64,000 nt of DNA, taken from the sequence record MK250017.1, one strand, 5' to 3'. The notes under the pieces are model-generated. The model was not told the DNA's origin. It saw nothing but the letters and a program-made list of their open reading frames with translations, and did no database searches. Below, piece by piece: positions 4,270-62,842 of this stretch. A program made the position numbers and the translations under genes. How positions within the stretch are numbered: position 1 is the stretch's first letter; every line of letters starts with the position of its first letter.

Positions 4270-5003
4270 AGTCATATATAATTTATTTTAAACTTATCTA
4301 TTAAACTTTCAATTCTATACAAAATTTCAAAAGTACTTGAATAATACTCAGTCTAATAGAAATATCATTATCTAATTTTAATTATAATAGATATAAATTA
4401 AAAAATAATTTTTAATATCTATCTTTAACTTAATACTATATATTAATTATACTACAATATTTATAAAAAGTTTATATTTACTAATAAATTTTAAAAAATA
4501 ATTTAATAAATAAAAAATATTTACATTTCCGAAAGACTTACCTTACTAAATTCATTAAATTATTAAAAATTATAAATAAATTTTTTCATATATTTATATA
4601 TAGATCTATCACAANNNNNNNNNNNNNNNNNNNNNNNNNNNNTGAGTTCTGAGAAAAAGTCTACATTTTTTCTAAATATTTTTAATGAATTCTAAAAATA
4701 ATTCATAACTAATTAATATTCAATAAATTAAATAAAATATTTTTCATATAATTTTCATATAAATTAATATAAAATAAAAATTCAGATCTAAATTAATATA
4801 AATTTAAATCTGAATTAAAAATTAAATTTTTTATATACTATATATAATATCTATCTCAANNNNNNNNNNNNNNNNNNNNNNNNNNNNNNNNNNNNNNNNN
4901 NNNNNNNNNNNNNNNNNNNNTTATTTTTTAACTATTTTTAATGATATTTTTTTAAACTTTACAAATAATATCTAATATAACTATAGAAAATTAATTTAAT
5001 TTA
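4270..5003. other. very AT-rich non-coding divergence region with two N-gaps and a hairpin
   Basis: No credible ORF; lies between divergent genes; AATTCAGATCTAAATT / AATTTAAATCTGAATT near 4779-4816 pairs at 15 of 16 positions. Confidence 0.5.
4954..4981 (+). promoter_or_regulatory. putative middle-class promoter (AAAC-N18-TATAAC)
   Basis: AAACTTT 4954 and TATAAC 4976; same 22-nt offset as more than 10 other sites. Confidence 0.5.
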
Positions 5004-5543
5004 ATGGATATGGATTTTAATACTAAAGTATAGTTTACGAGAACACGTAATGTAAAGATGCCTAATAGAGCAAATAAGCATGATGCAGGTACAGATTTTT
5101 TTGTACCTTATTATAATTAGGAGTTTCTTGTTGATTTGATTAAGAAGAATACAGGTAATAAGATTTTCTATAAGATTGAGAATGATGATTTGTTTATCAC
5201 TATTCCGGCTGGTGAACAGGTAATGATTCCATCAGGAATTAAGGTATGGATTAATGATAAGAGAACATATCTTCAGGCAACTAATAAGTCTGGTGTTGCT
5301 TCAAAATATCATCTTGATGTTATGGCAAATACGATTGATGCAGATTATCAGGGAGAAGTTCATATTAATCTTTGTAACAATGGTAATACAGATATTACAG
5401 TTCAGACTGGTCAGAAACTTGTACAGTTTATTCATCAGATTTATCTTGATACTGATTGGGTTGAAATGGATGAGAAAGAATATGATGAGATTGAAGCATC
5501 AGACAGAGGTGATGGAATGGCAGGTTCTACCGGAACATTCTAA
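5004..5543 (+). CDS. dut: trimeric dUTPase (179 aa, TAG at codons 10 and 39)
   Basis: Read-through restores motif 1 (HDAGTDF); TNKSG, ANTIDADYQGEV, QKLVQF, RGDGMAGSTG follow. Confidence 0.92.
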
Positions 5544-15487: not shown

Positions 15488-17062
15488 ATGAATAAAAATA
15501 TGGTTTATGGTGCTAATGAAGCAACTTCTTTAACTGATAAAGTTGCAGATTTTACAAAGGGTAAAAACATTCACTTTGGTTCTGGTGCATTTGAAGAATA
15601 GAAAGTTGTTGCTATTGCAACAGCAGCTGAATCTGATGCAAAGGTTCGTTTCGTATATGATGCAATAGGTGATTCTGGTATGGTATTTGTTGGTAATCAA
15701 CTTGCATCTTCTAAGATTCTTGACATTACAACAAATAAAGTAGCAAAGAAACATTTTGATCCTGAAACTGGTAATTATGTAGAATCAACTACAGAAAAAG
15801 TTGCAACTAAGGTAACAGTTACATGGTTTGGTTCTCAGGAAGATCCAAAAGATAATGTTGTAAAGACACAGACATGGACTACTGTATTTGATGTTATTGA
15901 TACAGATACAGTAAAAGCAATGATTGATAAAGCTTCAGCAGATTTAAATAAATCAGTTGATGATTTAAAAACAAAGCATGAAGCAGACGTTTTACGTTTA
16001 GATACATCAGTTAACGGCATTGAGACACTTCTTAAGCGCGATGTAGTTTCAGCTGACACTGGTAGTGCACTTACAGTAACTCCTACTTCTGCTGATGCAA
16101 CAGGTTATAAGACTTATAAGGTTGCAGTTAACGTAGATGATGCAAAAGGTTCAACTATTAAGGTTGTAGATAATAAGATTAAGATTGCAAAGTATGCAAT
16201 TAAGCAGGTTGCTGCGGATTCTATGGAAAAAGATGCAGATACTAATGAAACAAAGTATGCATCTGAATATCAGTTAATGATGACTGATGCTGATGGTGTT
16301 ACAAAGGCAGTTGGTGATAAGATTAACATTGCAAAAGACTTCTTAGTAACTAAGGCACATGTATGTACATTTAAGTATGTTGCTGAAAATGGCGCAGAAA
16401 TTAAGTATGATGTACAACTTGAAGATCAATGGGGTAATTCTCCAGCAGTTAAATATGGAGATGAAGTAACATCAGAAAATCAGCTTCCATGGTCTAAGAA
16501 TCAGGATGGTACATGGGAACAAGCACGTCTTGGTTTCGGTATTAAGTATGGTCATTCATATTTACACTTAGTTATCAATACTAAGCCAACTAATACAAAA
16601 GCTGCTAGACTTGATGATGTTTATCTTGATTTTACAGAAATCTTTACAACATTCAAGGGTGATGATAAATTCATCAAGGTTGAGAATGGCGTTGTTTCTT
16701 TGGATATTGATGCTGTTTCATCTAAAGTTGATGAAAAACTTAAGGTTAATGATACATTCACAGAACTTAAGGCAAAAGATGAAGCAATTGAAGGTCGTCT
16801 TAATGGATTAGATACATCTGTAAGCAATATTGAGAAATCATATGTAACAGATGCATCTCTTGAAGCGCCAAAGGCAGATAATGCACAGTTCAATACTTTA
16901 AAGATTACAAATCATAAAGTTGTTGATGGTGTTGCAAAAGACACAGAGGTTACTGTAGATGTTGCAAATGAAAAATATTATGCAGGATTAAATACAGCAT
17001 TAAATACACTTACAGAAAATGATAAACATCTTTCTGCACTTCTTACATGGGAAGAACTCTAA
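15488..17062 (+). CDS. fibre-like structural protein, WEEL paralogue 2 (524 aa, TAG at codon 38)
   Basis: ATG 15488 joins track ORF 15680; module ASSKILDITT; ends LLTWEEL. Confidence 0.7.
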
Positions 17063-52361: not shown

Positions 52362-55300
52362 ATGAAGGTAACAAAACGTGATGGTAGTTTTGAGAATTAT
52401 AGTGTTTAGACAGTTAAACGTGCAGTTAGAGAAGCGTTTAAGTCAACAAAGACTAAATACTCAAAAGACACAATTTCGAATATTGTAAGTTCTATTACGC
52501 CATATGATGGCATTCCTGTAGAAGAAATACAGGATCAGATAGAAACAAGTTTGTATTCTCATGATCAGCCTAAAGTTGCAAAAGAATTTATTCTTTATCG
52601 CAATAAGAAGAAGGAAATCAGAGAATGGGTTGCTAATAAAGAAGCATTTATTGAAAGATATAAAAATGCATCAAATACTGCAAATAGTACAATTGATGAT
52701 AATTCTAACGTATCATCTAAGAACATCGGTGTATTAAATGCAGAAATTCATAAAGGTGATAATATTCTTGTAAGTAGAGGAATGATTACAAGAAAGTTAA
52801 AAGATTTATTCCCTGATTTTAAAGCAAAACAATATCAAAAAGATTTAAAAAATCATATTATCTATAAGAATGATGAATCAAGTTTTGCTGGTGCTATAAG
52901 TCCTTATTGTGTTAGTGTATCTATGTATCCATTTCTTAATCATGGATTGGAAAAGATTGGAGGTTTATCATGCCATCCACAAAATCTTGATTCCTATTGT
53001 GGTATGTATGTAAATCTTGTATTTGCAGTTGCAGCACAATTTGCAGGAGCAGTAGCAACATCAGAATTCTTGGTATATTTTGATTATTTTGCACGAAAGG
53101 AATTTGGAGATGATTACTATTTGCATAGTAAAGAATTCTATAAGATTGGTCCAAAATATCGTAAGTTACTTAATGAATCTAATTACTGGTGTAAAGATGT
53201 AGATACACTTAGAAAACATGATTTTGGTACAGATGAATTAAATAAATTGAGAGATGAACTTGTTTATAATTCAGAACGACCATTATCTGATGAAGAACTT
53301 AAAGAATATGAAACAGAACTTTCTAAATATGATGTAGAAGGTTCAATAAAAGATTTTACAAATCCTATTAAGATTGGTGATGGTACAAGAACTATTGGTT
53401 CATGTATACAACAATTCTTCCAACAAGTAGTGTATTCAATTAACCAACCCGCGGCAAGTCGTGGTCTGCAATCTGCATTTGTAAATTTCTCTTATTTTGA
53501 TAAGCCTTTCTTTGAAGGTATGTTTGGGGAATTTGTATTTCCAGATGAAGAAGGTACAAGACCTTGTTGGGAAAGTGTTTCATGGTTGCAGAAAGATTTT
53601 ATGATTTGGTTTAATAAAGAGCGCCTTCGTACTATAATCACTTTCCCTGTTGAAAGTTTTGCATTGGTATATAAGGATGGAAAGTTTGTAGATGAAGATT
53701 CTGCAGATTTTGTTGCAGAAGAATATTCTCGTGGTCATTCATTCTTTACTTATATGTCAGATACTGTTGATTCATTATCAAGCTGCTGTTTCGATGGTGA
53801 TACACCATTTATGTTTGTAGAACCTCTTAATATGGAAGAGCATGGTGGTAATAATGCATATATGGTTTCAACTATTAAAGATGCATATGAAAAATATAAA
53901 GATGATATAATTAATGTATATCATATGAATTTTAATGGTACTACAGGTAAATGTACAGGTGAATGGGTAAATGCAAAATTTGTAAAAGCACAAGCTATTC
54001 AGGAAGTACGAATTTATTTTAAACCAGATGATTTCAATCCAGATGAGTCAAGGAATGTAATGAGAGTTACGCCGGATCATATATTCCCTGTTATTGATGA
54101 TAATGGATTTATTACAGATAAAAATGCATATTTGTTACAGACTGGAGATCAACTTATTTTTGAATATGCACAATATATGGGATTATTTAGAGATGAATTC
54201 CCTGATAGAGATCAAGATTTAGTAAAACGTGCTATTTCAAAAGTTGAAATTGTAAATCTTGATGAACCAAAGGATTATTATTGTGTAGAGTTATGTGATA
54301 AAAATATTGAACCATACTTTTTGTTACCTAATGGAAATATTACACATAACTGTCGCCTTAAGAATAAGATTCAAACAAAGGAATTTAATTTTACAAATGG
54401 TAACTTAGGGATCAACTTGGGTCCTTTATGTGCTTAATTGCTAATCAAGCAATGTATTAATATAGCGATATTAATGCATCGGTGAAGCCTAAACATAAGT
54501 TGTGAAACTATATGCATGGTAATACCGAACCAAGTTAATAAATATGTTATAATTTTACATTTATAATATATGAATAATAAAATATTTACAATTTACAAAA
54601 TATCATTTCCAAATGGAAAAGTATATATTGGTTAGACATATCATTATCATTAGAGAATTAAAGAACATTTAAATGAAATGAAACATAGTGATTATAAATT
54701 ATATAGAGCTATGAGGAAATATAATATAAATGAAAATAATTTTTCTATAGTAGAAGAAAATATTTTAACATAGAACGATGCAGATAATAAAGAAATATAT
54801 TATATCAATTTATATGATAGTTATAATAATGGATATAATTCTACATTAGGTGGACATGCTGCAACAATAACAAAAATAGGAGAAGAACATCCTAAAGCTA
54901 TATTAAATGATAATGAATTATTAGAATTAAGAAAAATTAGATATTCTATGAAATATACATTTGGAGAAGTATATGATATGTATAAAAATAAAATGTCAAA
55001 AAGTGGTTTTTCAAAATATTGGCATTATTATACAAGACCTGAAATCGGAGAAGAATATAATACTGATGAAGTAAATAAATTTTATAAATCTGATAGGAGA
55101 ACAAGAAGAGGTATATTACATGCAAATTCAAGAAATTTATCAGATGAAGAAGTTTTAAATATAAGAATACGATATTTTGTAAATGGTGAAAAAGAAGATG
55201 ATATTTTTAAAAAATATAAACACTTATATTCAAAGAGTGGTTTTAATAAAATATTATTTGGATAGTCATATATGCATGTAAAAATGCCTATTAAAACAGA

Positions 55301-56546
55301 TAAGTGTAAATAGAAATTACCATAGTTATCAAAAGAAGAAGTAATTTCATTAAGAGAACAATATAATAATGGTAAGTCTATTAATGAATTAAAAGTTGGA
55401 AAATATGAAAAATATTCAATGAATAATTTTAGAAATATGTTAATAGGTAGAACATATAAAAATTATTAATGTGTGTGGAGGTCATCCCCTAAGTGATGAG
55501 CAGGAGGAGTAGGGCTACTATTGATACGTAGCAGTATTTTAGGAAACGAAGTACTTTAAATGCCGAAATAGTGCAATGTTTATTAACATAATAAACATAA
55601 GATATGACCCGGACCATATAGAAATATATGGAGAAAACGTCAAACAGGTTCAAAATCTGTAATAACATTAAATCTTAGTCGTATAACACAAGATTGGTTT
55701 AATAGTGTTAAGAAAACAGGTGTAACAAAAGAAAATGTAGAAGAACATTATGATGAATTGTGTCATTATTTTGGTGACATTCTTGATAGAGTATACAAAT
55801 ATCATACTGCATATAATGAACTTCTATGGGATATGTATGATGCTGGTTTGCTTCCGGTATATAAAGCTGGATTTATTAGTTTGAATAAGCAATATTTAAC
55901 AATTGGATTAAATGGTCTTAATCAAATGGCAGAATTTTTAGGAATTACATGCAATATAAATCCTCATTATGAAAAATTATGTCAAACAATATTTGGATAT
56001 ATTAAGCAGAAGAATCAAGAAGCTGCAGGTATGTTTAACGGACACAAGCTCACGTTTAATACCGAGTGCGTACCAGCGGAAAGTCTTGCAATAAAAAATT
56101 ATAATTGGGATAAAGAAGATGGATATTGGGTAAGTGATGATACAAATCTTTATGCATCTTATATTTTTAAACCAAATGACAAGAGCTTATCAATTTTCGA
56201 TAAAATTACATTACATGGTCGTGATTATATCGGAGATTTCTTAGATGGTGGTTCTGCGGCTCATCTTAATTTATCAGAGCATTTATCTAAGAAACAAATA
56301 AAACATATCATGCAATTTGCAGCACAGGTAGGATGTCAGTATTGGACATTTAATGTACCTAATTGTAAGTGTGAAGATTGCGGATATATATCAAAAACTC
56401 CATTTGATAAGTGTCCAAAATGTGGATCAGTTCATATAAGTTTATATGACCGTATCATTGGATATTTAACTAAAATTTCGAACTGGTCAGATGGACGTCA
56501 ACAAGAACAAAAGACACGTGTTTATCTACATAGTGAAAATATTTAA
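52362..56546 (+). CDS. nrdD: class III anaerobic ribonucleotide reductase, join(52362..54412,55640..56546); 985-aa precursor, 797 aa after intein removal
   Basis: ATP cone MKVTKRDG (TAG at codon 16); SLSSC|intein|CRL; spliced NGNLGIQTGSKSVITLNLSR; VPAESL; CxxC..CPKC; glycyl-radical RIIGY. Confidence 0.93.
53787..54350 (+). mobile_element. cis mini-intein in NrdD (188 aa, no endonuclease)
   Basis: Block A CFDGDT; block B VTPDHIF; block F YYCVEL...YFLLPNG; terminal THN then Cys+1. Confidence 0.92.
54413..55639 (+). mobile_element. group I intron (1227 nt) with GIY-YIG ORF in nrdD
   Basis: GGGAT|...AAAACG|TCAAAC; P1 guide GGGTCCTT; P4 TCGGT 54479 / ACCGA; P7 GAGGTCAT 55478 / ATGACCC 55604; S-like AAGATATGACC; P9 CCATATA-GAAA-TATATGG. 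Confidence 0.92.
54570..55469 (+). CDS. intron-encoded GIY-YIG endonuclease (299 aa, 6 TAGs)
   Basis: TIYKISFPNGKVYIG-TAG-T, RIKEH, LYRAMRKY, EIYYI, NGYNSTLGG; HTH-like C-terminal repeats. Confidence 0.9.
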
Positions 56547-56572
56547 GTTTTTATAACCTATTTTATTTTTAA
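56530..56572 (+). repeat. 43-bp direct repeat, copy 1 (nrdD 3' end and stop)
   Basis: ATAGTGAAAATATTTAAGTTTTTATAACCTATTTTATTTTTAA, identical at 57723-57765. Confidence 0.95.
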
Positions 56573-56677: not shown

Positions 56678-57739
56678 ATGAATTATAATAAAATTTATAA
56701 TAATATTATTAATAATGCAAAAAATCGAAATAATATAAACAATCAATACTTTGAAATACATCATATTATCCCTAAATGTATAGGAGGAACTGATGATGAT
56801 AAAAATTTAGTAAAACTTACATTACGTGAACATTTTATATGTCATGAATTATTAGTTAAAATATATCCAGATATACAATCATTAAAATGCGCATTATGGA
56901 TTATTTGTATTACGACATTAGAAGCAAAAAAAGAATATATAACAAATAATATAAAATATAAAAATAATAAATTACCTATTAATCATAGAGTACAACATTT
57001 TTTAAATGATTTTGAAAAACATATTAATATATCTTCAAGAGATTATGAATATTGTAGAACATTATATTATATAGCAACAAAAGGGAAAAAACGAACTGTT
57101 GAGCAATGTAAAAAAATTTCAGATGCGACAAAGCATGCTATGAAAGATCCATCTAGAGTACAATTAAGAAGAAAAGGTGTATTGGGTAGTAAATTTTATT
57201 ATGATTTAATAACAAATAAATCTTATAAATGGTTTCCGGGAGATCCAGATATTGATTTAAATAAGTATGCGTGGGGTAGAGGAAAGAAAATGAGTTTAAA
57301 ATCAAAAACATTAATGTCTGAAAATTTATCAAAATATAAAAAAGTATATTATTATAATGATAATTTAAAATCATCTACATGCTTTTGTAAAGATTAGATA
57401 AAAATATTACCTGATAGTTGGCATTTAGGAAGAAAATTCGGCGGATATAATAAAATGAAAATATTTATTATACCATTATTAAGAAATGTACATTTTAAAT
57501 TAGTATGTAATTAGCATTTTATTGATAATATATTTTATCATATTAATTTATTAAACAAATAGGAAATAAGTATAGGTATATTAACGATTAATGAAAAAAT
57601 ATTAAGTGACTTAATACAAAAAAATATTGATATTAATGATGAAAAATATATTACAATAATATATAACAATATATTAAATAATATAAACCAAATTAAAACT
57701 ATTAATAATAGCGTTTATTTAAATAGTGAAAATATTTAA
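56678..57739 (+). CDS. free-standing HNH homing endonuclease, T4 Mob-like (353 aa, 3 TAGs)
   Basis: EIHHIIPKCIGGTDDDKNLVKLTLREHFICH; ATAAATA 56650 upstream; ends VYLNSENI-TAA inside repeat copy 2. Confidence 0.85.
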
Positions 57740-57765
57740 GTTTTTATAACCTATTTTATTTTTAA
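57723..57765 (+). repeat. 43-bp direct repeat, copy 2 (end of the HNH gene)
   Basis: Identical to 56530-56572. Confidence 0.95.
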
Positions 57766-59800: not shown

Positions 59801-62800
59801 TTATTTGTCATTATTACTATTTGTATCTAATGTATTTTCATCTATATCATTATTATTCGAAAATTCTACTTGCTAATTTGTATTTTTAGTCATGTAATTT
59901 GTAAATGTTATTAATGTGCCTGGTATTCTATCTGAACCTAATATCGCTTTTACAGATTCCCAGAATTCTCTTTGTTTTATTGTATCTGTTCCTATATGAT
60001 AATGTTTTGTTGTTGCACCTGTATCATCTCGTGCCTATTCTATATAAGCAGATACACCATAATCATAGAATAATTTTAATATAGTAGGACTTTTCATTAT
60101 AATATTTGTCATAAGTTCAGTAAAATCCATACCGTTATTAATAATATCTATAGCTTCGCCATATAAATGTCGTGAATTATTCTTTTTAAAATACATTACT
60201 TCACCAATAGCATTCATACATTTATAATAATCATATTTTTTTATAAATGCATTACCATCAACTTTATTACCATATTCATCTACTGCCCATCTTCTTCCAG
60301 ATACTAATTTACATTTATTATCAGATTCAGATAAAATAGTTTTATAAATATCCTTCATAAAAGATTTTAAACCAGTTAATGGTATAGTAGAACCAGCTAC
60401 ATAATCAGATTTCTTTACATATTGATCTATCATATCCATATTAAAATTAACTGCCTCTACTGTTTCTTTTCCGTGTGCATTATATATAGTACCGGCTTCT
60501 TCTTGTTCTTGCTATTGTTCATCAGTTGTAGAACTTATATTCTATTTTCTCTATGCAGTCACGACTGCATCTTCAGATGTTTTTGCACCTTTAATATGTT
60601 CTGCTCCATATCGTTTTAATGCATCATAATATGCCATTCTAGCAAGTTTACCATTTCCAATATCTACTAATACAATAGTATTTGCTGTTTTTTTATCTAT
60701 TGTTTTACCTGATTTATCTTTAATTTTAGATGGTACTGGCCATTCTCTTCTAACTAATTTAACATTTGTTCTCCAATTTGTACCCTAACCCTAATCATTA
60801 TCAGTATCGAATACCCATTCAATACCATCTATAATATACCAACCAGATTCTGCTTCATACATGCATTCTTCTATTTTTGTACGTGCTTGACCAGTTCTAA
60901 TAGCTTGTTCTGCTCTATTTAAATCCATTAAAACAATAGGCATTTTTTCACCACGAACAATACTTAAGTTTGCACCATTTAATTCAACAAGTAAATACTG
61001 TTTTTGTAACTATAATAAATTTCTCATATTATGTTCATATGCAACTTCATAAAATCTATGAGTATTTCCAGATGACATCATATTATTTCCGGTTCCTTCA
61101 AGATTTGCTGCATCTCCATCAGATTGTTGATTTGTAATTTTCTCTGGTTCATTTTTATTTGATGATTGAGTTTCTGAAGTAGCCATTGCAGAATCACCAC
61201 TTGCATATGTCATATTTCTTCCAGGTCCTAATAATACGAAGAAATCATTATCTGCTCGTGTTGGATCAAATTTTGTTCTATTTAAACATAATGAAAATTC
61301 AACACTATAATTAGGATTATTTGGATCTATTAAACCTGTGTTAACTGATGAATATTGCATTTTACAATTTAATCCCACAAAATCCTATATTTCCTATGCA
61401 TTATTAAGTAATCTCCAATTATTAACATGATATACTGTTGCTGCTTCATTATCATCTGTAATATTAGTAAATATCTTTGTCTATATATGCGGTTTTACTT
61501 TCTATTCTTCATCTGTTTTAGTTGCTGCTTTACCATCAATAGCTCTATTATTAATAAATGTATTTGTCCAGAATGTCATATCTATTGATTCATCATAACC
61601 ACTTTCACCTAATAATCTATTAATATTCATGAAAGATAATCCATATCTCGGATCTATCCATGATTCAAAAAATGAATTAGAATCTTTCCATGCATGTGTT
61701 GTCAAATCATGTAAAAACATTTCTGGTGATTTACAATTACACCAAACCATTACATCGTTTGTATCATCTGGATCACAAAAGAAGAAACTTAATCTTAAAC
61801 GTTTTGCAAGATCCATCATAGCATCTCGTGATGAACCATTAAAATTATATCTAGATTCTTCATTTCTTAAATCTGGTACATATAATTCTCCGGTTATAAT
61901 CTATGTCTAATATTTCTGATATTGCGTCTAATCCATCTAATCAGAAACAACATTTGTAATTCTGAAATCACATCTCATAGACTTAATCATTGCATGTCCA
62001 CTCTGAAAAAATACACTGCATCTATCACCTTGCTTTACAAAATCCTTTTTTAATAAACCAGGGTCTGATGTAGTTACTATAAGTCTCATCGTAGGTAAAA
62101 CACCTGTTAATGGCATTTGATAAATTTCATACTCATTATAATTCTTATAATAACCGGTTTCCATAGAAAAATGCTATATTTCTGTAGATTCAAAATAATG
62201 ATCATTTATACGAATTATAGGATATACGGCACCTTTATTATACCATTGATTCTCTTTAATATTAGGACTTGTTACATCTGGTACTGAAATACCAATTACA
62301 TCAGGATTATTAATATCAGCGCCTAATGGTAATGAACTACGAGGATTATCTTTATCTTTATTTCCCATTGAATCCTCAAATATACCTTTATTTGAAGAAT
62401 CTTTAGAACCTTTACCATTGTCATCAGAATCATTTGCATTATCTCCAGTATTTGATGTATTCTTATTTGTTCCTGAAGAATCATTCTCTGACTCATCATT
62501 TGTATTAGAATTATCATCATTACTTCCATCAGAATTAGATGTATCTTTATTAGATGTATCAACCATATCTAATATTTTATCTTCATCTGATTTTGAATAA
62601 CAAACACCACCATATTTTCCTGAACCATAATCAATAGTATAATTAAAAAAATCTTTCTTTATTATCTAATTTGTTGTTACATCTTTATATACTTTTGTTT
62701 CTGTATATAATTTTGCATTCTTACCTTTAAATATGATATTATAAGTATTATTTATTGTGTCAGTATAATAATAATGTGTTATAGTTTTATCTGATGATAC

Positions 62801-62842
62801 TTCTCCTTTTTTTAAATATTTAATACCATTTATCGTTAACAT
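59801..62842 (-). CDS. baseplate hub-like protein with C-terminal M15-type zinc peptidase (1013 aa, 18 TAGs)
   Basis: Five track ORFs (62174, 61937, 61502, 61010, 60035) share one frame from ATG 62842 to TAA 59801; GWYIIDGIEWVF...WRTNVKLVRR; SRHLYGEAID (H-x6-D) and HYH. Confidence 0.7.

What the first reader, a model, noticed from the sequence alone, without database searches (positions are those of the whole stretch)
52362..56546. nrdD needs both RNA splicing and protein splicing, at sites 62 nt apart
Seen: a 188-aa mini-intein ends directly before the Cys of CRL; 62 nt later a 1227-nt group I intron begins, with P1 (GGGAU/GUCCU), P10 (UCAA/UUGG) and a GIY-YIG ORF. Known: this Cys is the thiyl-radical residue of class III RNRs, and T4 nrdD has an intron. 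Inference: the endonuclease-less intein may hitch-hike by co-conversion from the neighbouring intron's homing events.
Basis: partly seen in the sequence, partly recalled or inferred. Interest (0 to 1): 0.8.

Follow-up and report, generated by a model that had tools for sequence, protein, structure and literature searches.

The report
Megaphage nrdD split by intein and intron
The anaerobic ribonucleotide reductase gene of the gut megaphage Lak-A1 is interrupted by a small self-splicing protein element and, 62 bases later, a self-splicing RNA intron with its own homing nuclease. Both are real, but they spread independently, so this is a new example of a known arrangement.

Summary
The window is Prevotella phage Lak-A1, which reads TAG as Gln. 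nrdD (52362-56546) carries a 188-aa mini-intein (53787-54350). The intein ends directly before the Cys that aligns with the radical Cys of class III reductases. A 62-nt exon piece follows, then a 1227-nt group I intron (54413-55639) with a GIY-YIG endonuclease ORF (54570-55469, six TAG=Gln codons).

Intron-less Lak alleles and intein-less relatives delimit both elements exactly. A metatranscriptome contig joins 54412 to 55640. The intein folds as a HINT domain (pLDDT 92) and is under purifying selection. A covariance model built from 25 other phage introns hits the intron core (E 3e-32) and also the T4 nrdD intron.

The hitch-hiking idea is not supported:
- All four intein/intron combinations exist.
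- Every Lak allele examined has the intein, while the intron is polymorphic.
- The flank haplotype linked to intron status spans only -12 to +10, short of the intein at -62.
- Related phages carry 353-aa LAGLIDADG inteins at the same site, so the mini-intein is best read as an endonuclease-less relic.

Intron-plus-intein RNR genes are already known (SPbeta nrdE, Jug and crAss-like phages).

The parts
52362..53786 (+). nrdD exon 1, N-extein (ATP-cone plus barrel up to ...DSLSSC); TAG=Gln at codon 16 (52407-52409)
   Evidence: NCBIfam TIGR02827 E 1e-108, profile positions up to 301; translation
53787..54350 (+). 188-aa class 1 mini-intein (Cys1, block B TPDH, penultimate His, terminal Asn); no endonuclease domain
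   Evidence: Absent from relatives that read SSCCRL. Family profile hits PDB inteins, E 2.8e-6. AF2 pLDDT 92. Foldseek top 50 are all HINT domains, RadA intein TM 0.70/0.75. dN/dS 0.15 between A and B lineages.
54351..54412 (+). 62-nt C-extein piece of exon 1: +1 Cys (radical-Cys position) RLKNKIQTKEFNFTNGNLG + 2 nt of the Ile codon
   Evidence: Aligns with TmNrdD 328-SCCR-331, which equals T4 288-MGCR-291 (PMC4493059)
54408..54425 (+). P1 (exon GGGAU with intron GUCCU, U.G at the splice site) and internal guide; UUGG 54417-54420 pairs with exon 2 UCAA (P10)
   Evidence: Read directly. Compensatory P1/P10 variants occur in G002 (GGGGU/GGCCC; CAAAAC/GUUUUG), and P1 variants (GGGGU/GCCC) in L300 and L301.
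54413..55639 (+). Group I intron (IA2-like), 1227 nt, ends in omega-G
   Evidence: Precise absence in Lak-C1/L007/L058. RNA contig joint 54412|55640. ORF-less homologues at the same site in L054 and L301.
54570..55469 (+). GIY-YIG homing endonuclease ORF (299 aa, six TAG=Gln codons) in the P6a loop
   Evidence: phrog_7168 E 2.6e-19, phrog_5123 E 1.9e-12. TIGR01453 E 1.5e-6, below cut-off. I-TevI catalytic domain 1MK0 E 0.001 over residues 8-91. Position of ORF is from comparison with ORF-less L054.
55478..55639 (+). Intron 3' catalytic core: P7 (55480-85 with 55604-09), P7.1 (55486-55507), P7.2 (55514-32), extra hairpin (55533-55), P8 (55576-98), J8/7, P9 (55614-31)
   Evidence: Model R1, built from 25 other phage introns: 127.5 bits, E 2.7e-32, all pairs standard. 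Family pair counts: 92.6% paired versus 75% shuffled. Same model hits the T4 nrdD intron, E 1.2e-6.
55640..56546 (+). nrdD exon 2 (…QTGSKSVITLNLSR… to the glycyl-radical motif RIIGY and Zn-ribbon cysteines)
   Evidence: TIGR02827 E 1e-79, profile 323-596; translation

Best explanation
Lak-A1 nrdD is an active gene invaded by two independent selfish elements. Both target adjacent, highly conserved active-site codons.

**Steps from gene to enzyme**
1. The pre-mRNA removes a 1227-nt IA2-type group I intron by the standard guanosine-initiated mechanism. P1 and P10 are set by an internal guide at 54417-54425. Splicing joins 54412 to 55640.
2. The 985-aa precursor is then cut and rejoined by a 188-aa class 1 mini-intein. 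The intein uses Cys1, the TxxH block, His-Asn and the +1 Cys. This yields the 797-aa NrdD with the motif SSC-CRL. The +1 nucleophile is the Cys at the radical position.

**How each element spreads or persists**
- The intron is currently mobile. Its GIY-YIG endonuclease is translated only where TAG is read as Gln. It presumably cuts intron-less alleles in co-infections, and repair copies in the intron with a very short flank.
- The intein has no endonuclease and is present in every Lak allele examined. It is best read as the endonuclease-less form of an intein family whose 353-aa LAGLIDADG versions still occupy the same site in related phages. It persists because only precise excision leaves a working enzyme.

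**What is shown and what is inferred**
- Shown: the boundaries, the RNA junction, the intein fold, the selection on the intein, and the distribution of both elements.
- Inferred: endonuclease activity, actual protein splicing, and the direction of endonuclease-domain loss.
For: **Identity of the window and genetic code**
- The window is 100% identical to Lak-A1.
- Code 15 is published for Lak phages (PMC6784885).
- In the window, the endonuclease ORF has 6 TAG and a 1013-aa ORF has 18 TAG.
- A CAA codon in A1 corresponds to TAG in C1 and B at the same Gln codon.

**Intron**
- Intron-less alleles delimit it exactly.
- A contig in the RNA library has the joint 54412|55640 with the intron-plus flank.
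- Model R1 hits the core at E 2.7e-32. Covariation supports the structure. The same model hits the T4 nrdD intron.
- The ORF-less homologue in L054 gives a weak Rfam RF00028 hit at E 0.032.
- P1 and P10 co-vary with the exon sequence in other hosts.
- Three compensatory pairs separate the A and B copies.

**Endonuclease**
- PHROG, NCBIfam and I-TevI matches.
- The ORF is intact in lineage B and in G002.

**Intein**
- The alignment shows the conserved splicing blocks, with the LAGLIDADG module inserted between blocks B and F in allelic inteins.
- The family profile hits PDB inteins. The model has pLDDT 92 and the HINT fold.
- dN/dS is 0.15, against 0.06 for the exteins.

**Independence of the two elements**
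- All four combinations exist.
- On the NrdD tree the intein needs at least 7 changes and the intron at least 5. In about 3.5 of 4 independent pairs that differ in intron state, the intein state does not differ.
- The linked flank haplotype runs only from -12 to +10.
Against: - Rfam's curated group I model does not reach its threshold on the Lak copy. The group I assignment rests on my own family model and on hand analysis. P3 is ambiguous, with two candidate pairings. The 5' half is supported by only a few homologues.
- The RNA evidence is one assembled contig in one run, 30 nt on the short side. DNA contamination cannot be formally excluded. No silent control stretch could be laid.
- No protein-level evidence for splicing exists. 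No sequence-library hit was found for the single intein sequence.
- The direction of endonuclease loss versus gain in the intein family is not rooted.
- The short flank haplotype could reflect selection for cleavage-resistant targets rather than the length of conversion tracts.
Confidence: 0.8

Rival explanations
1. This is the reader's idea: co-homing. The endonuclease-less intein is maintained or spread because double-strand breaks made by the neighbouring intron's GIY-YIG enzyme are repaired with tracts long enough to copy the intein, 62 nt away, as well.
For: - The distance is short.
- Trans-homing of defunct elements by a neighbouring endonuclease is documented in T4 (mobE/I-TevIII, PMC2790892). 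Co-homing has been proposed for neighbouring inteins (PMC10643990).
- In every nrdD intron copy found by an intron-based pattern search, an intein lies upstream. L300 and L301 also have both elements.
Against: - G002 has the intron plus endonuclease but no intein.
- Twelve or more lineages have an intein without the intron.
- Every Lak allele examined has the intein, while the intron is polymorphic among alleles that are over 99% identical.
- Intron-linked markers end at -12, and the marker at -56 is unlinked.
- L054 pairs the intron with a different, split intein lineage.
- L300 and L301 were found through the intein, so they are a biased sample.
- The independent-pairs test shows no joint change, although it is underpowered.
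Confidence: 0.1
2. nrdD in Lak-A1 is a decaying pseudogene. The insertions are tolerated because the gene is no longer needed.
For: - The gene is interrupted twice here, and up to six times in Lak-B relatives.
- It has an in-frame TAG under the standard code.
Against: - Extein dN/dS is 0.056-0.060 between the A and B lineages.
- All catalytic motifs are intact: the CRL Cys, RIIGY and the Zn-ribbon cysteines.
- TAG is a sense codon in this phage.
- The spliced junction is seen in RNA.
- The intein catalytic residues are conserved across the family.
Confidence: 0.03
3. The intein is a conditional switch rather than a mere relic. With Cys at -1, 1 and +1, it splices only under reducing, anoxic conditions. 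This would couple maturation of an oxygen-sensitive reductase to the gut environment.
For: - The precursor has three adjacent or catalytic cysteines: SSC|C...HN|C.
- The intein is under purifying selection and is kept in every Lak allele examined.
- Redox-gated inteins are known from other systems (my own knowledge, not tested here).
Against: - Purifying selection is equally expected for any intein in an essential gene.
- Many close relatives do without any intein.
- Nothing here tests redox dependence.
Confidence: 0.08

Closest known systems
Bacillus phage SPbeta bnrdE (group I intron plus intein in one ribonucleotide reductase gene; Lazarevic et al. 1998, as cited in PMC3653736)
   Same: One RNR catalytic-subunit gene in a phage needs both RNA splicing and protein splicing. 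Both elements sit in conserved regions.
   Different: SPbeta has a class Ib nrdE in a temperate Bacillus phage with the standard code. Here it is a class III nrdD in a 540-kb TAG-recoded Prevotella megaphage, with the intein at the radical Cys and the intron only 62 nt downstream.
T4 nrdD (sunY) group IA2 intron with GIY-YIG I-TevII
   Same: Same host gene family, same intron class and same endonuclease family. My family model hits the T4 intron core, E 1.2e-6.
   Different: - The insertion site differs. T4 is at about aa 180 (AYE|YEVN), which matches the Lak-A2 'alpha' intron site and not this one.
- The T4 ORF lies 3' of the core, whereas here it is in P6a, as in the T4 td intron.
- T4 nrdD has no intein.
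Jug and crAss-like gut phages with nrdD, terL and polymerase genes fragmented by group I introns and inteins (PMC12880540)
   Same: Gut Bacteroidota phages. nrdD is a hot spot for introns, endonucleases and intein-splicing domains. Splicing is validated with metatranscriptome reads.
   Different: That paper reports that Jug phages show no alternative code and does not describe Lak nrdD. The Lak records are unannotated, and the original Lak paper reports only tRNA introns.
RIR1-type inteins inserted directly N-terminal to the thiyl-radical Cys of class I/II RNRs (PMC2677866)
   Same: The intein sits immediately before the radical Cys, which serves as the +1 nucleophile.
   Different: Here the host is the class III enzyme (NrdD finger-loop SCCR motif). 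The family includes mini, LAGLIDADG-bearing and split versions at one site.
Trans-homing and co-homing (T4 mobE mobilising defunct I-TevIII, PMC2790892; neighbouring MCM inteins, PMC10643990)
   Different: The distribution data here argue against it for this pair.

Membership tests
Group I intron | 5' splice site after U paired with G in P1; intron ends in G; internal guide pairs with both exons (P1, P10) | tested here: met
   GGGAU/GUCCU with a U.G pair, UCAA/UUGG, omega-G at 55639. Exon and guide co-vary in G002, L300 and L301.
Group I intron | Conserved catalytic core (P3-P8, P7 with J8/7) recognised by a curated model | tested here: inconclusive
   - Rfam RF00028 gives no hit on the Lak copy. 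It gives 18 bits, E 0.032, on the ORF-less homologue L054.
- My own model R1 gives 127.5 bits on the window and 30.2 bits on the bona fide T4 nrdD intron.
- P7, P7.1, P7.2, P8 and P9 are supported by covariation.
- P3 is ambiguous.
Group I intron | Excised from RNA at the predicted sites | tested here: met
   Contig in RNA run X8 joins 54412 to 55640 with the flank haplotype of intron-bearing alleles. There is no such joint in three DNA-like runs. This is a single contig.
Group I intron | Self-splicing with guanosine in vitro | not testable with these tools
   Needs a bench assay
Intein (HINT domain, class 1) | In-frame insertion, absent from orthologues, at a conserved site | tested here: met
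   Relatives read SSCCRL without the 188 aa
Intein (HINT domain, class 1) | Catalytic residues: Cys/Ser1, block B TxxH, C-terminal His-Asn, +1 Cys/Ser/Thr | tested here: met
   C1, T95-x-x-H98, H187-N188 and +1 Cys. All are invariant or nearly so in 17 family members.
Intein (HINT domain, class 1) | HINT fold | tested here: met
   AF2 pLDDT 92.1. Foldseek top hits are all inteins, Pho RadA intein E 3e-10, TM 0.70/0.75. Profile versus PDB: TFIIB intein E 2.8e-6. The single sequence alone gave no hit.
Intein (HINT domain, class 1) | Protein splicing demonstrated | not testable with these tools
   Only indirect evidence: dN/dS 0.15
GIY-YIG homing endonuclease (I-TevI type) | N-terminal GIY-YIG catalytic domain with the conserved Arg, Glu and Asn | tested here: met
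   Aligns with the I-TevI catalytic domain 1MK0 over residues 8-91, E 0.001. phrog_5123 E 1.9e-12. TIGR01453 scores 28 bits, below the cut-off of 56.
GIY-YIG homing endonuclease (I-TevI type) | Cleaves the intron-less allele near the insertion site | not testable with these tools
   Indirect only: presence/absence polymorphism with a linked 22-nt flank haplotype
Class III ribonucleotide reductase NrdD | Finger-loop Cys motif, C-terminal glycyl-radical motif and Zn ribbon | tested here: met
   TIGR02827 on both exons. After splicing the motif is SCCRL. RIIGY and CxxC...CxxC are present. Alignment to T. maritima NrdD 4COI.

The most novel reading that the evidence does not exclude
The arrangement could be more than two parasites side by side. 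Maturation of an oxygen-sensitive enzyme may be gated twice. First, an intein whose -1, 1 and +1 residues are all Cys might splice only under reducing conditions. Second, the intron's endonuclease carries 6 TAG codons against 1 in the whole NrdD. It can therefore be translated only once the phage's TAG suppressor is active, which would time homing to late infection.
Probability: 0.08. Interest if true: 0.7.

Novelty: new member of a known kind. Interest (0 to 1): 0.42.

Why it matters
- **Annotation.** The finding corrects the reading of an unannotated megaphage gene. Lak nrdD is one intact gene, not fragments. It can be read only with TAG=Gln, one RNA splice and one protein splice.
- **A natural experiment on homing.** Across Lak genomes that are otherwise over 99% identical, one gene shows seven insertion sites for self-splicing elements in different combinations.
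  - The distribution separates an element found in every Lak allele (the intein) from mobile ones (the introns).
  - It maps a conversion-linked flank of about 22 nt.
  - At a single site it shows LAGLIDADG-bearing, mini and split inteins.
- **Co-homing.** It gives a concrete negative test of the co-homing idea for an intron/intein pair.

Tried and rejected
- **Rfam.** Four scans of the window or Lak and EF1 loci gave no group I hit at the intron. The curated model misses this IA2-type family. Only the ORF-less L054 copy gave a weak hit. A scan of nine other family loci hit only an unrelated neighbouring intron in L161.
- **Intein as a single sequence.** It gave nothing in NCBIfam, PHROGs or PDB. 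AF2 without an alignment failed, with pLDDT 43. The family alignment solved both problems.
- **tRNA scan.** No tRNA was found in the window, so there is no suppressor tRNA to show here.
- **ORF-length statistics.** Comparing ORF lengths under different stop reassignments is not diagnostic in this 25% GC sequence.
- **Whole genome.** It is not held for this window.
- **Old PNAS papers.** The two on SPbeta are not in the library.
- **Pairwise T4/Lak NrdD alignment.** It misaligned the finger loop. I used the T. maritima alignment and the published motif equivalence instead.
- **P3 pairing.** The candidate GCAU/AUGC co-varies between Lak and L054 but is absent from other family members. The alternative UGUGCU/AGUGCA also co-varies. 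I left P3 undecided.
- **Second hit of my intron model.** The weak hit at 16449-16612 lies antisense inside an intact ORF and was dismissed.
- **Metagenome pattern search.** It returned mostly chance matches. Across the viral-contig and metagenome scans together, only 12 of 97 matches were nrdD.
Full report
**What the window is.** The stretch 52362-56546 is 100% identical to Prevotella phage Lak-A1 (MK250015-18). It is 99.6% identical to Lak-A2, about 99.6% to Lak-C1 over the part they share, and about 87% to the nine baboon Lak-B genomes. These GenBank records carry no annotation. The paper that described them reports code 15 (TAG=Gln) and tRNA introns. It mentions neither nrdD, nor homing endonucleases, nor inteins (PMC6784885).

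The window itself shows the recoding:
- nrdD has a TAG at codon 16, inside its ATP-cone.
- The intron ORF has six TAG and no other stop over 299 codons.
- A 1013-aa ORF on the minus strand has 18 TAG.
- A CAA (Gln) codon in A1 is TAG in C1 and B at the same position.
- No tRNA lies in the window.

Read with TAG=Gln, nrdD is laid out as follows:

| Part | Coordinates | Notes |
|---|---|---|
| Exon 1 | 52362-54412 | |
| Intein | 53787-54350 | in frame, 188 aa, CFDGD...NITHN |
| Piece from the +1 Cys | 54351-54412 | 62 nt |
| Intron | 54413-55639 | 1227 nt, follows U, ends in G |
| Exon 2 | 55640-56546 | |

The mature product is 797 aa and reads ...DSLSSC-CRLKNKIQTKEFNFTNGNLGI-QTGSKSVITLNLSR... 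NCBIfam TIGR02827 covers profile positions up to 301 on the N-extein and 323-596 on exon 2. The roughly 21 missing positions correspond to the 62-nt piece.

The Cys after the intein is the second Cys of the SCCR motif. This motif aligns with T. maritima NrdD 328-SCCR-331. The structure paper equates that motif with T4 288-MGCR-291, where Cys290 is the radical residue (PMC4493059). I confirmed C290, C79 and G580 in the T4 sequence.

**The intein.** The single sequence matched nothing in NCBIfam, PHROGs or PDB. A full-library HMMER search found 16 relatives. The NrdD loci fetched from IMG/VR showed that the same site, SSC|CRL, is occupied in many relatives:

| Intein type | Loci |
|---|---|
| 353 aa, two LAGLIDADG motifs | L010, L021, L025, L041, L055, L082 |
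| Mini-intein, 164-165 aa | L039, L063 |
| 188-aa form | all Lak contigs |
| Interrupted forms | L013, L054 |

In the alignment, blocks A, B (TxxH), F and G are shared. The LAGLIDADG module sits exactly between B and F. C1, T95, H98, H187 and N188 are invariant or nearly so.

The family profile hits solved inteins end to end: the TFIIB mini-intein at E 2.8e-6, then RadA, PolC and NrdJ-1. With the alignment, AlphaFold gives pLDDT 92.1. The 50 best Foldseek matches are all inteins or HINT domains.

Between Lak-A1 and Lak-B the intein has dN/dS 0.15. The exteins have 0.056-0.060. The intein is therefore constrained, but less tightly than the enzyme.

**The intron.** Lak-C1, L007 and L058 lack exactly 54413-55639 and keep the reading frame.

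P1 is GGGAU/GUCCU with the U.G pair at the splice site. P10 is UCAA/UUGG. In other hosts the guide changes together with the exon:
- G002: P1 GGGGU/GGCCC and P10 CAAAAC/GUUUUG.
- L300 and L301: P1 GGGGU/GCCC.

Rfam does not detect the Lak copy. The 349-nt ORF-less copy at the same site in L054 gives RF00028 at 18 bits, E 0.032.

The 3' core is 91% identical to an intron in the DNA polymerase gene of Enterococcus phage EF1. A 23-nt core motif occurs in more than 116 IMG/VR contigs. From 25 of these, with no Lak or L054 sequence included, I built a covariance model with P7, P7.1, P7.2, an extra hairpin, P8 and P9. Its results:
- It hits the window at 55478-55657 with 127.5 bits, E 2.7e-32, and every pair is standard. 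P7 reads GGUCAU/AUGACC instead of the family's GACUAU/AUAGUC.
- On 98 distinct family members, 92.6% of cells pair, against 75% in shuffles and 47% or less when partners are slid. Thirty of 36 pairs show changes on both sides. The alignment is fitted to the model, which favours the structure somewhat.
- It hits the core of the experimentally established T4 nrdD intron, E 1.2e-6.

The A and B copies of the Lak intron differ by three compensatory pairs in one hairpin.

Comparison with L054 places the endonuclease ORF in the P6a loop. P3 remains ambiguous.

**The endonuclease.** The 299-aa ORF matches PHROG homing-endonuclease families (E 2.6e-19, and E 1.9e-12 for the GIY-YIG family). It matches TIGR01453 below the cut-off. 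It aligns with the I-TevI catalytic domain over residues 8-91. The ORF is intact in Lak-B and in G002.

**RNA evidence.** Of four runs laid on 53700-56000, only X8 is on record as RNA. X8 holds a 1416-nt contig that joins 54412 to 55640, skipping 1227 nt (CA..CG). All 12 of its differences from the window lie upstream of 54357, so it carries the flank of intron-bearing alleles. Every known intron-less Lak allele has five substitutions at 54401-54410.

The same run also has a contig crossing the 3' junction unspliced. The three DNA-like runs show no such joint. This is one contig with 30 nt on the short side, and no control stretch could be laid.

**Do the two elements travel together?** No.

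| Combination | Where found |
|---|---|
| Intein and intron | Lak-A1, A2, B, L018/L087, several metagenome contigs; L054 (a different, split intein); L300, L301 |
| Intein only | Lak-C1, L007, L058, L010, L021, L025, L039, L041, L055, L063, L082, P0015 |
| Intron only | G002, a 178-kb IMG/VR phage reading ...SLASCCRLRNE... with the intron plus a homologous GIY-YIG ORF at the same codon and phase |
| Neither | most relatives |

On a tree of the C-terminal 294 columns, intein presence needs at least 7 changes and the intron at least 5. In four to five independent pairs that differ in intron state, the intein state usually does not differ. The test is underpowered.

Within Lak-A-like alleles, seven synonymous differences are perfectly linked to intron absence across otherwise different backgrounds. 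They lie at 54401, 54404, 54405, 54407, 54410, 55646 and 55649, which is -12 to +10 around the site. The next marker, 54356 at -56, is found with and without the intron. Whatever moved the intron in or out did not carry the intein side along.

The co-homing idea itself is not new. Here it is simply not needed.

**Comparison with what is known.**
- Intron plus intein in one phage RNR gene is classical (SPbeta nrdE).
- nrdD fragmented by introns and intein domains is reported for Jug phages, with metatranscriptome support.
- Inteins directly before the radical Cys are the commonest RNR insertion point in classes I and II.
- The T4 nrdD intron lies elsewhere, in the Tyr codon of AYE|YEVN. That is the same codon and phase as the extra 1372-nt intron of Lak-A2 at window 53433/53434.

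**Verdict.** This is a correct and carefully read observation of a known kind of arrangement in an unannotated megaphage. The natural polymorphism around it is the most useful by-product.

Noticed in passing
window 53433/53434, ~53456-53479, ~53651, ~56130, ~56249, ~56470 (insertions seen in L001, L003, L005, L007, L018, L058): Other Lak genomes carry up to five further group-I-like insertions in the same nrdD. Each follows a T and ends in G. Several have the GATATAGTC motif, and some have HNH or GIY-YIG ORFs while others are ORF-less. Combinations differ between genomes that are over 99% identical. The Lak-A2 insertion at 53433/4 sits in the same Tyr codon and phase as the T4 nrdD intron.
   Followed up: partly
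window 56678-57739 and repeats 56520-56572 / 57713-57765: A free-standing HNH homing-endonuclease gene (three TAG=Gln codons, phrog_655 E 2e-39) lies directly after nrdD. The cassette is bracketed by a 53-bp direct repeat (96% identical) that contains the last seven codons and the stop of nrdD. Lak-B diverges at this point.
   Followed up: partly
L054 4059-5999 (IMGVR_UViG_3300001525_000313): In this distant relative the intein at the same site is split. The N-part ends in a stop, an out-of-frame 329-aa ORF follows (4391-5380), and a 39-aa C-part begins with Met. This is a 'fractured gene' layout. An ORF-less 349-nt copy of the intron follows 62 nt later.
   Followed up: partly
window 54570-55469 versus 52362-56546: The endonuclease ORF uses TAG six times in 299 codons. 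The 797 NrdD codons hold a single TAG. Translation of the endonuclease therefore depends much more on TAG suppression than the host gene does. This could time its expression.
   Followed up: no
window 59801-62842 (-): A 1013-aa ORF with 18 in-frame TAG codons and no other stop. This is clear in-window evidence for TAG=Gln in a probable late gene.
   Followed up: no
L006 1675-2664 (Enterococcus phage EF1, MF001358): The annotated 'DNA polymerase III alpha' and the following 'hypothetical protein' look like two exons. They are separated by an intron of the same family, whose 3' core is 91% identical to the Lak intron, with an internal ORF. The GenBank record does not annotate the intron.
   Followed up: partly
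window 16449-16612 (-): A weak hit of my intron model (16.7 bits, E 0.009). It lies antisense inside an intact 524-aa ORF (15488-17062) and is probably chance.
   Followed up: yes
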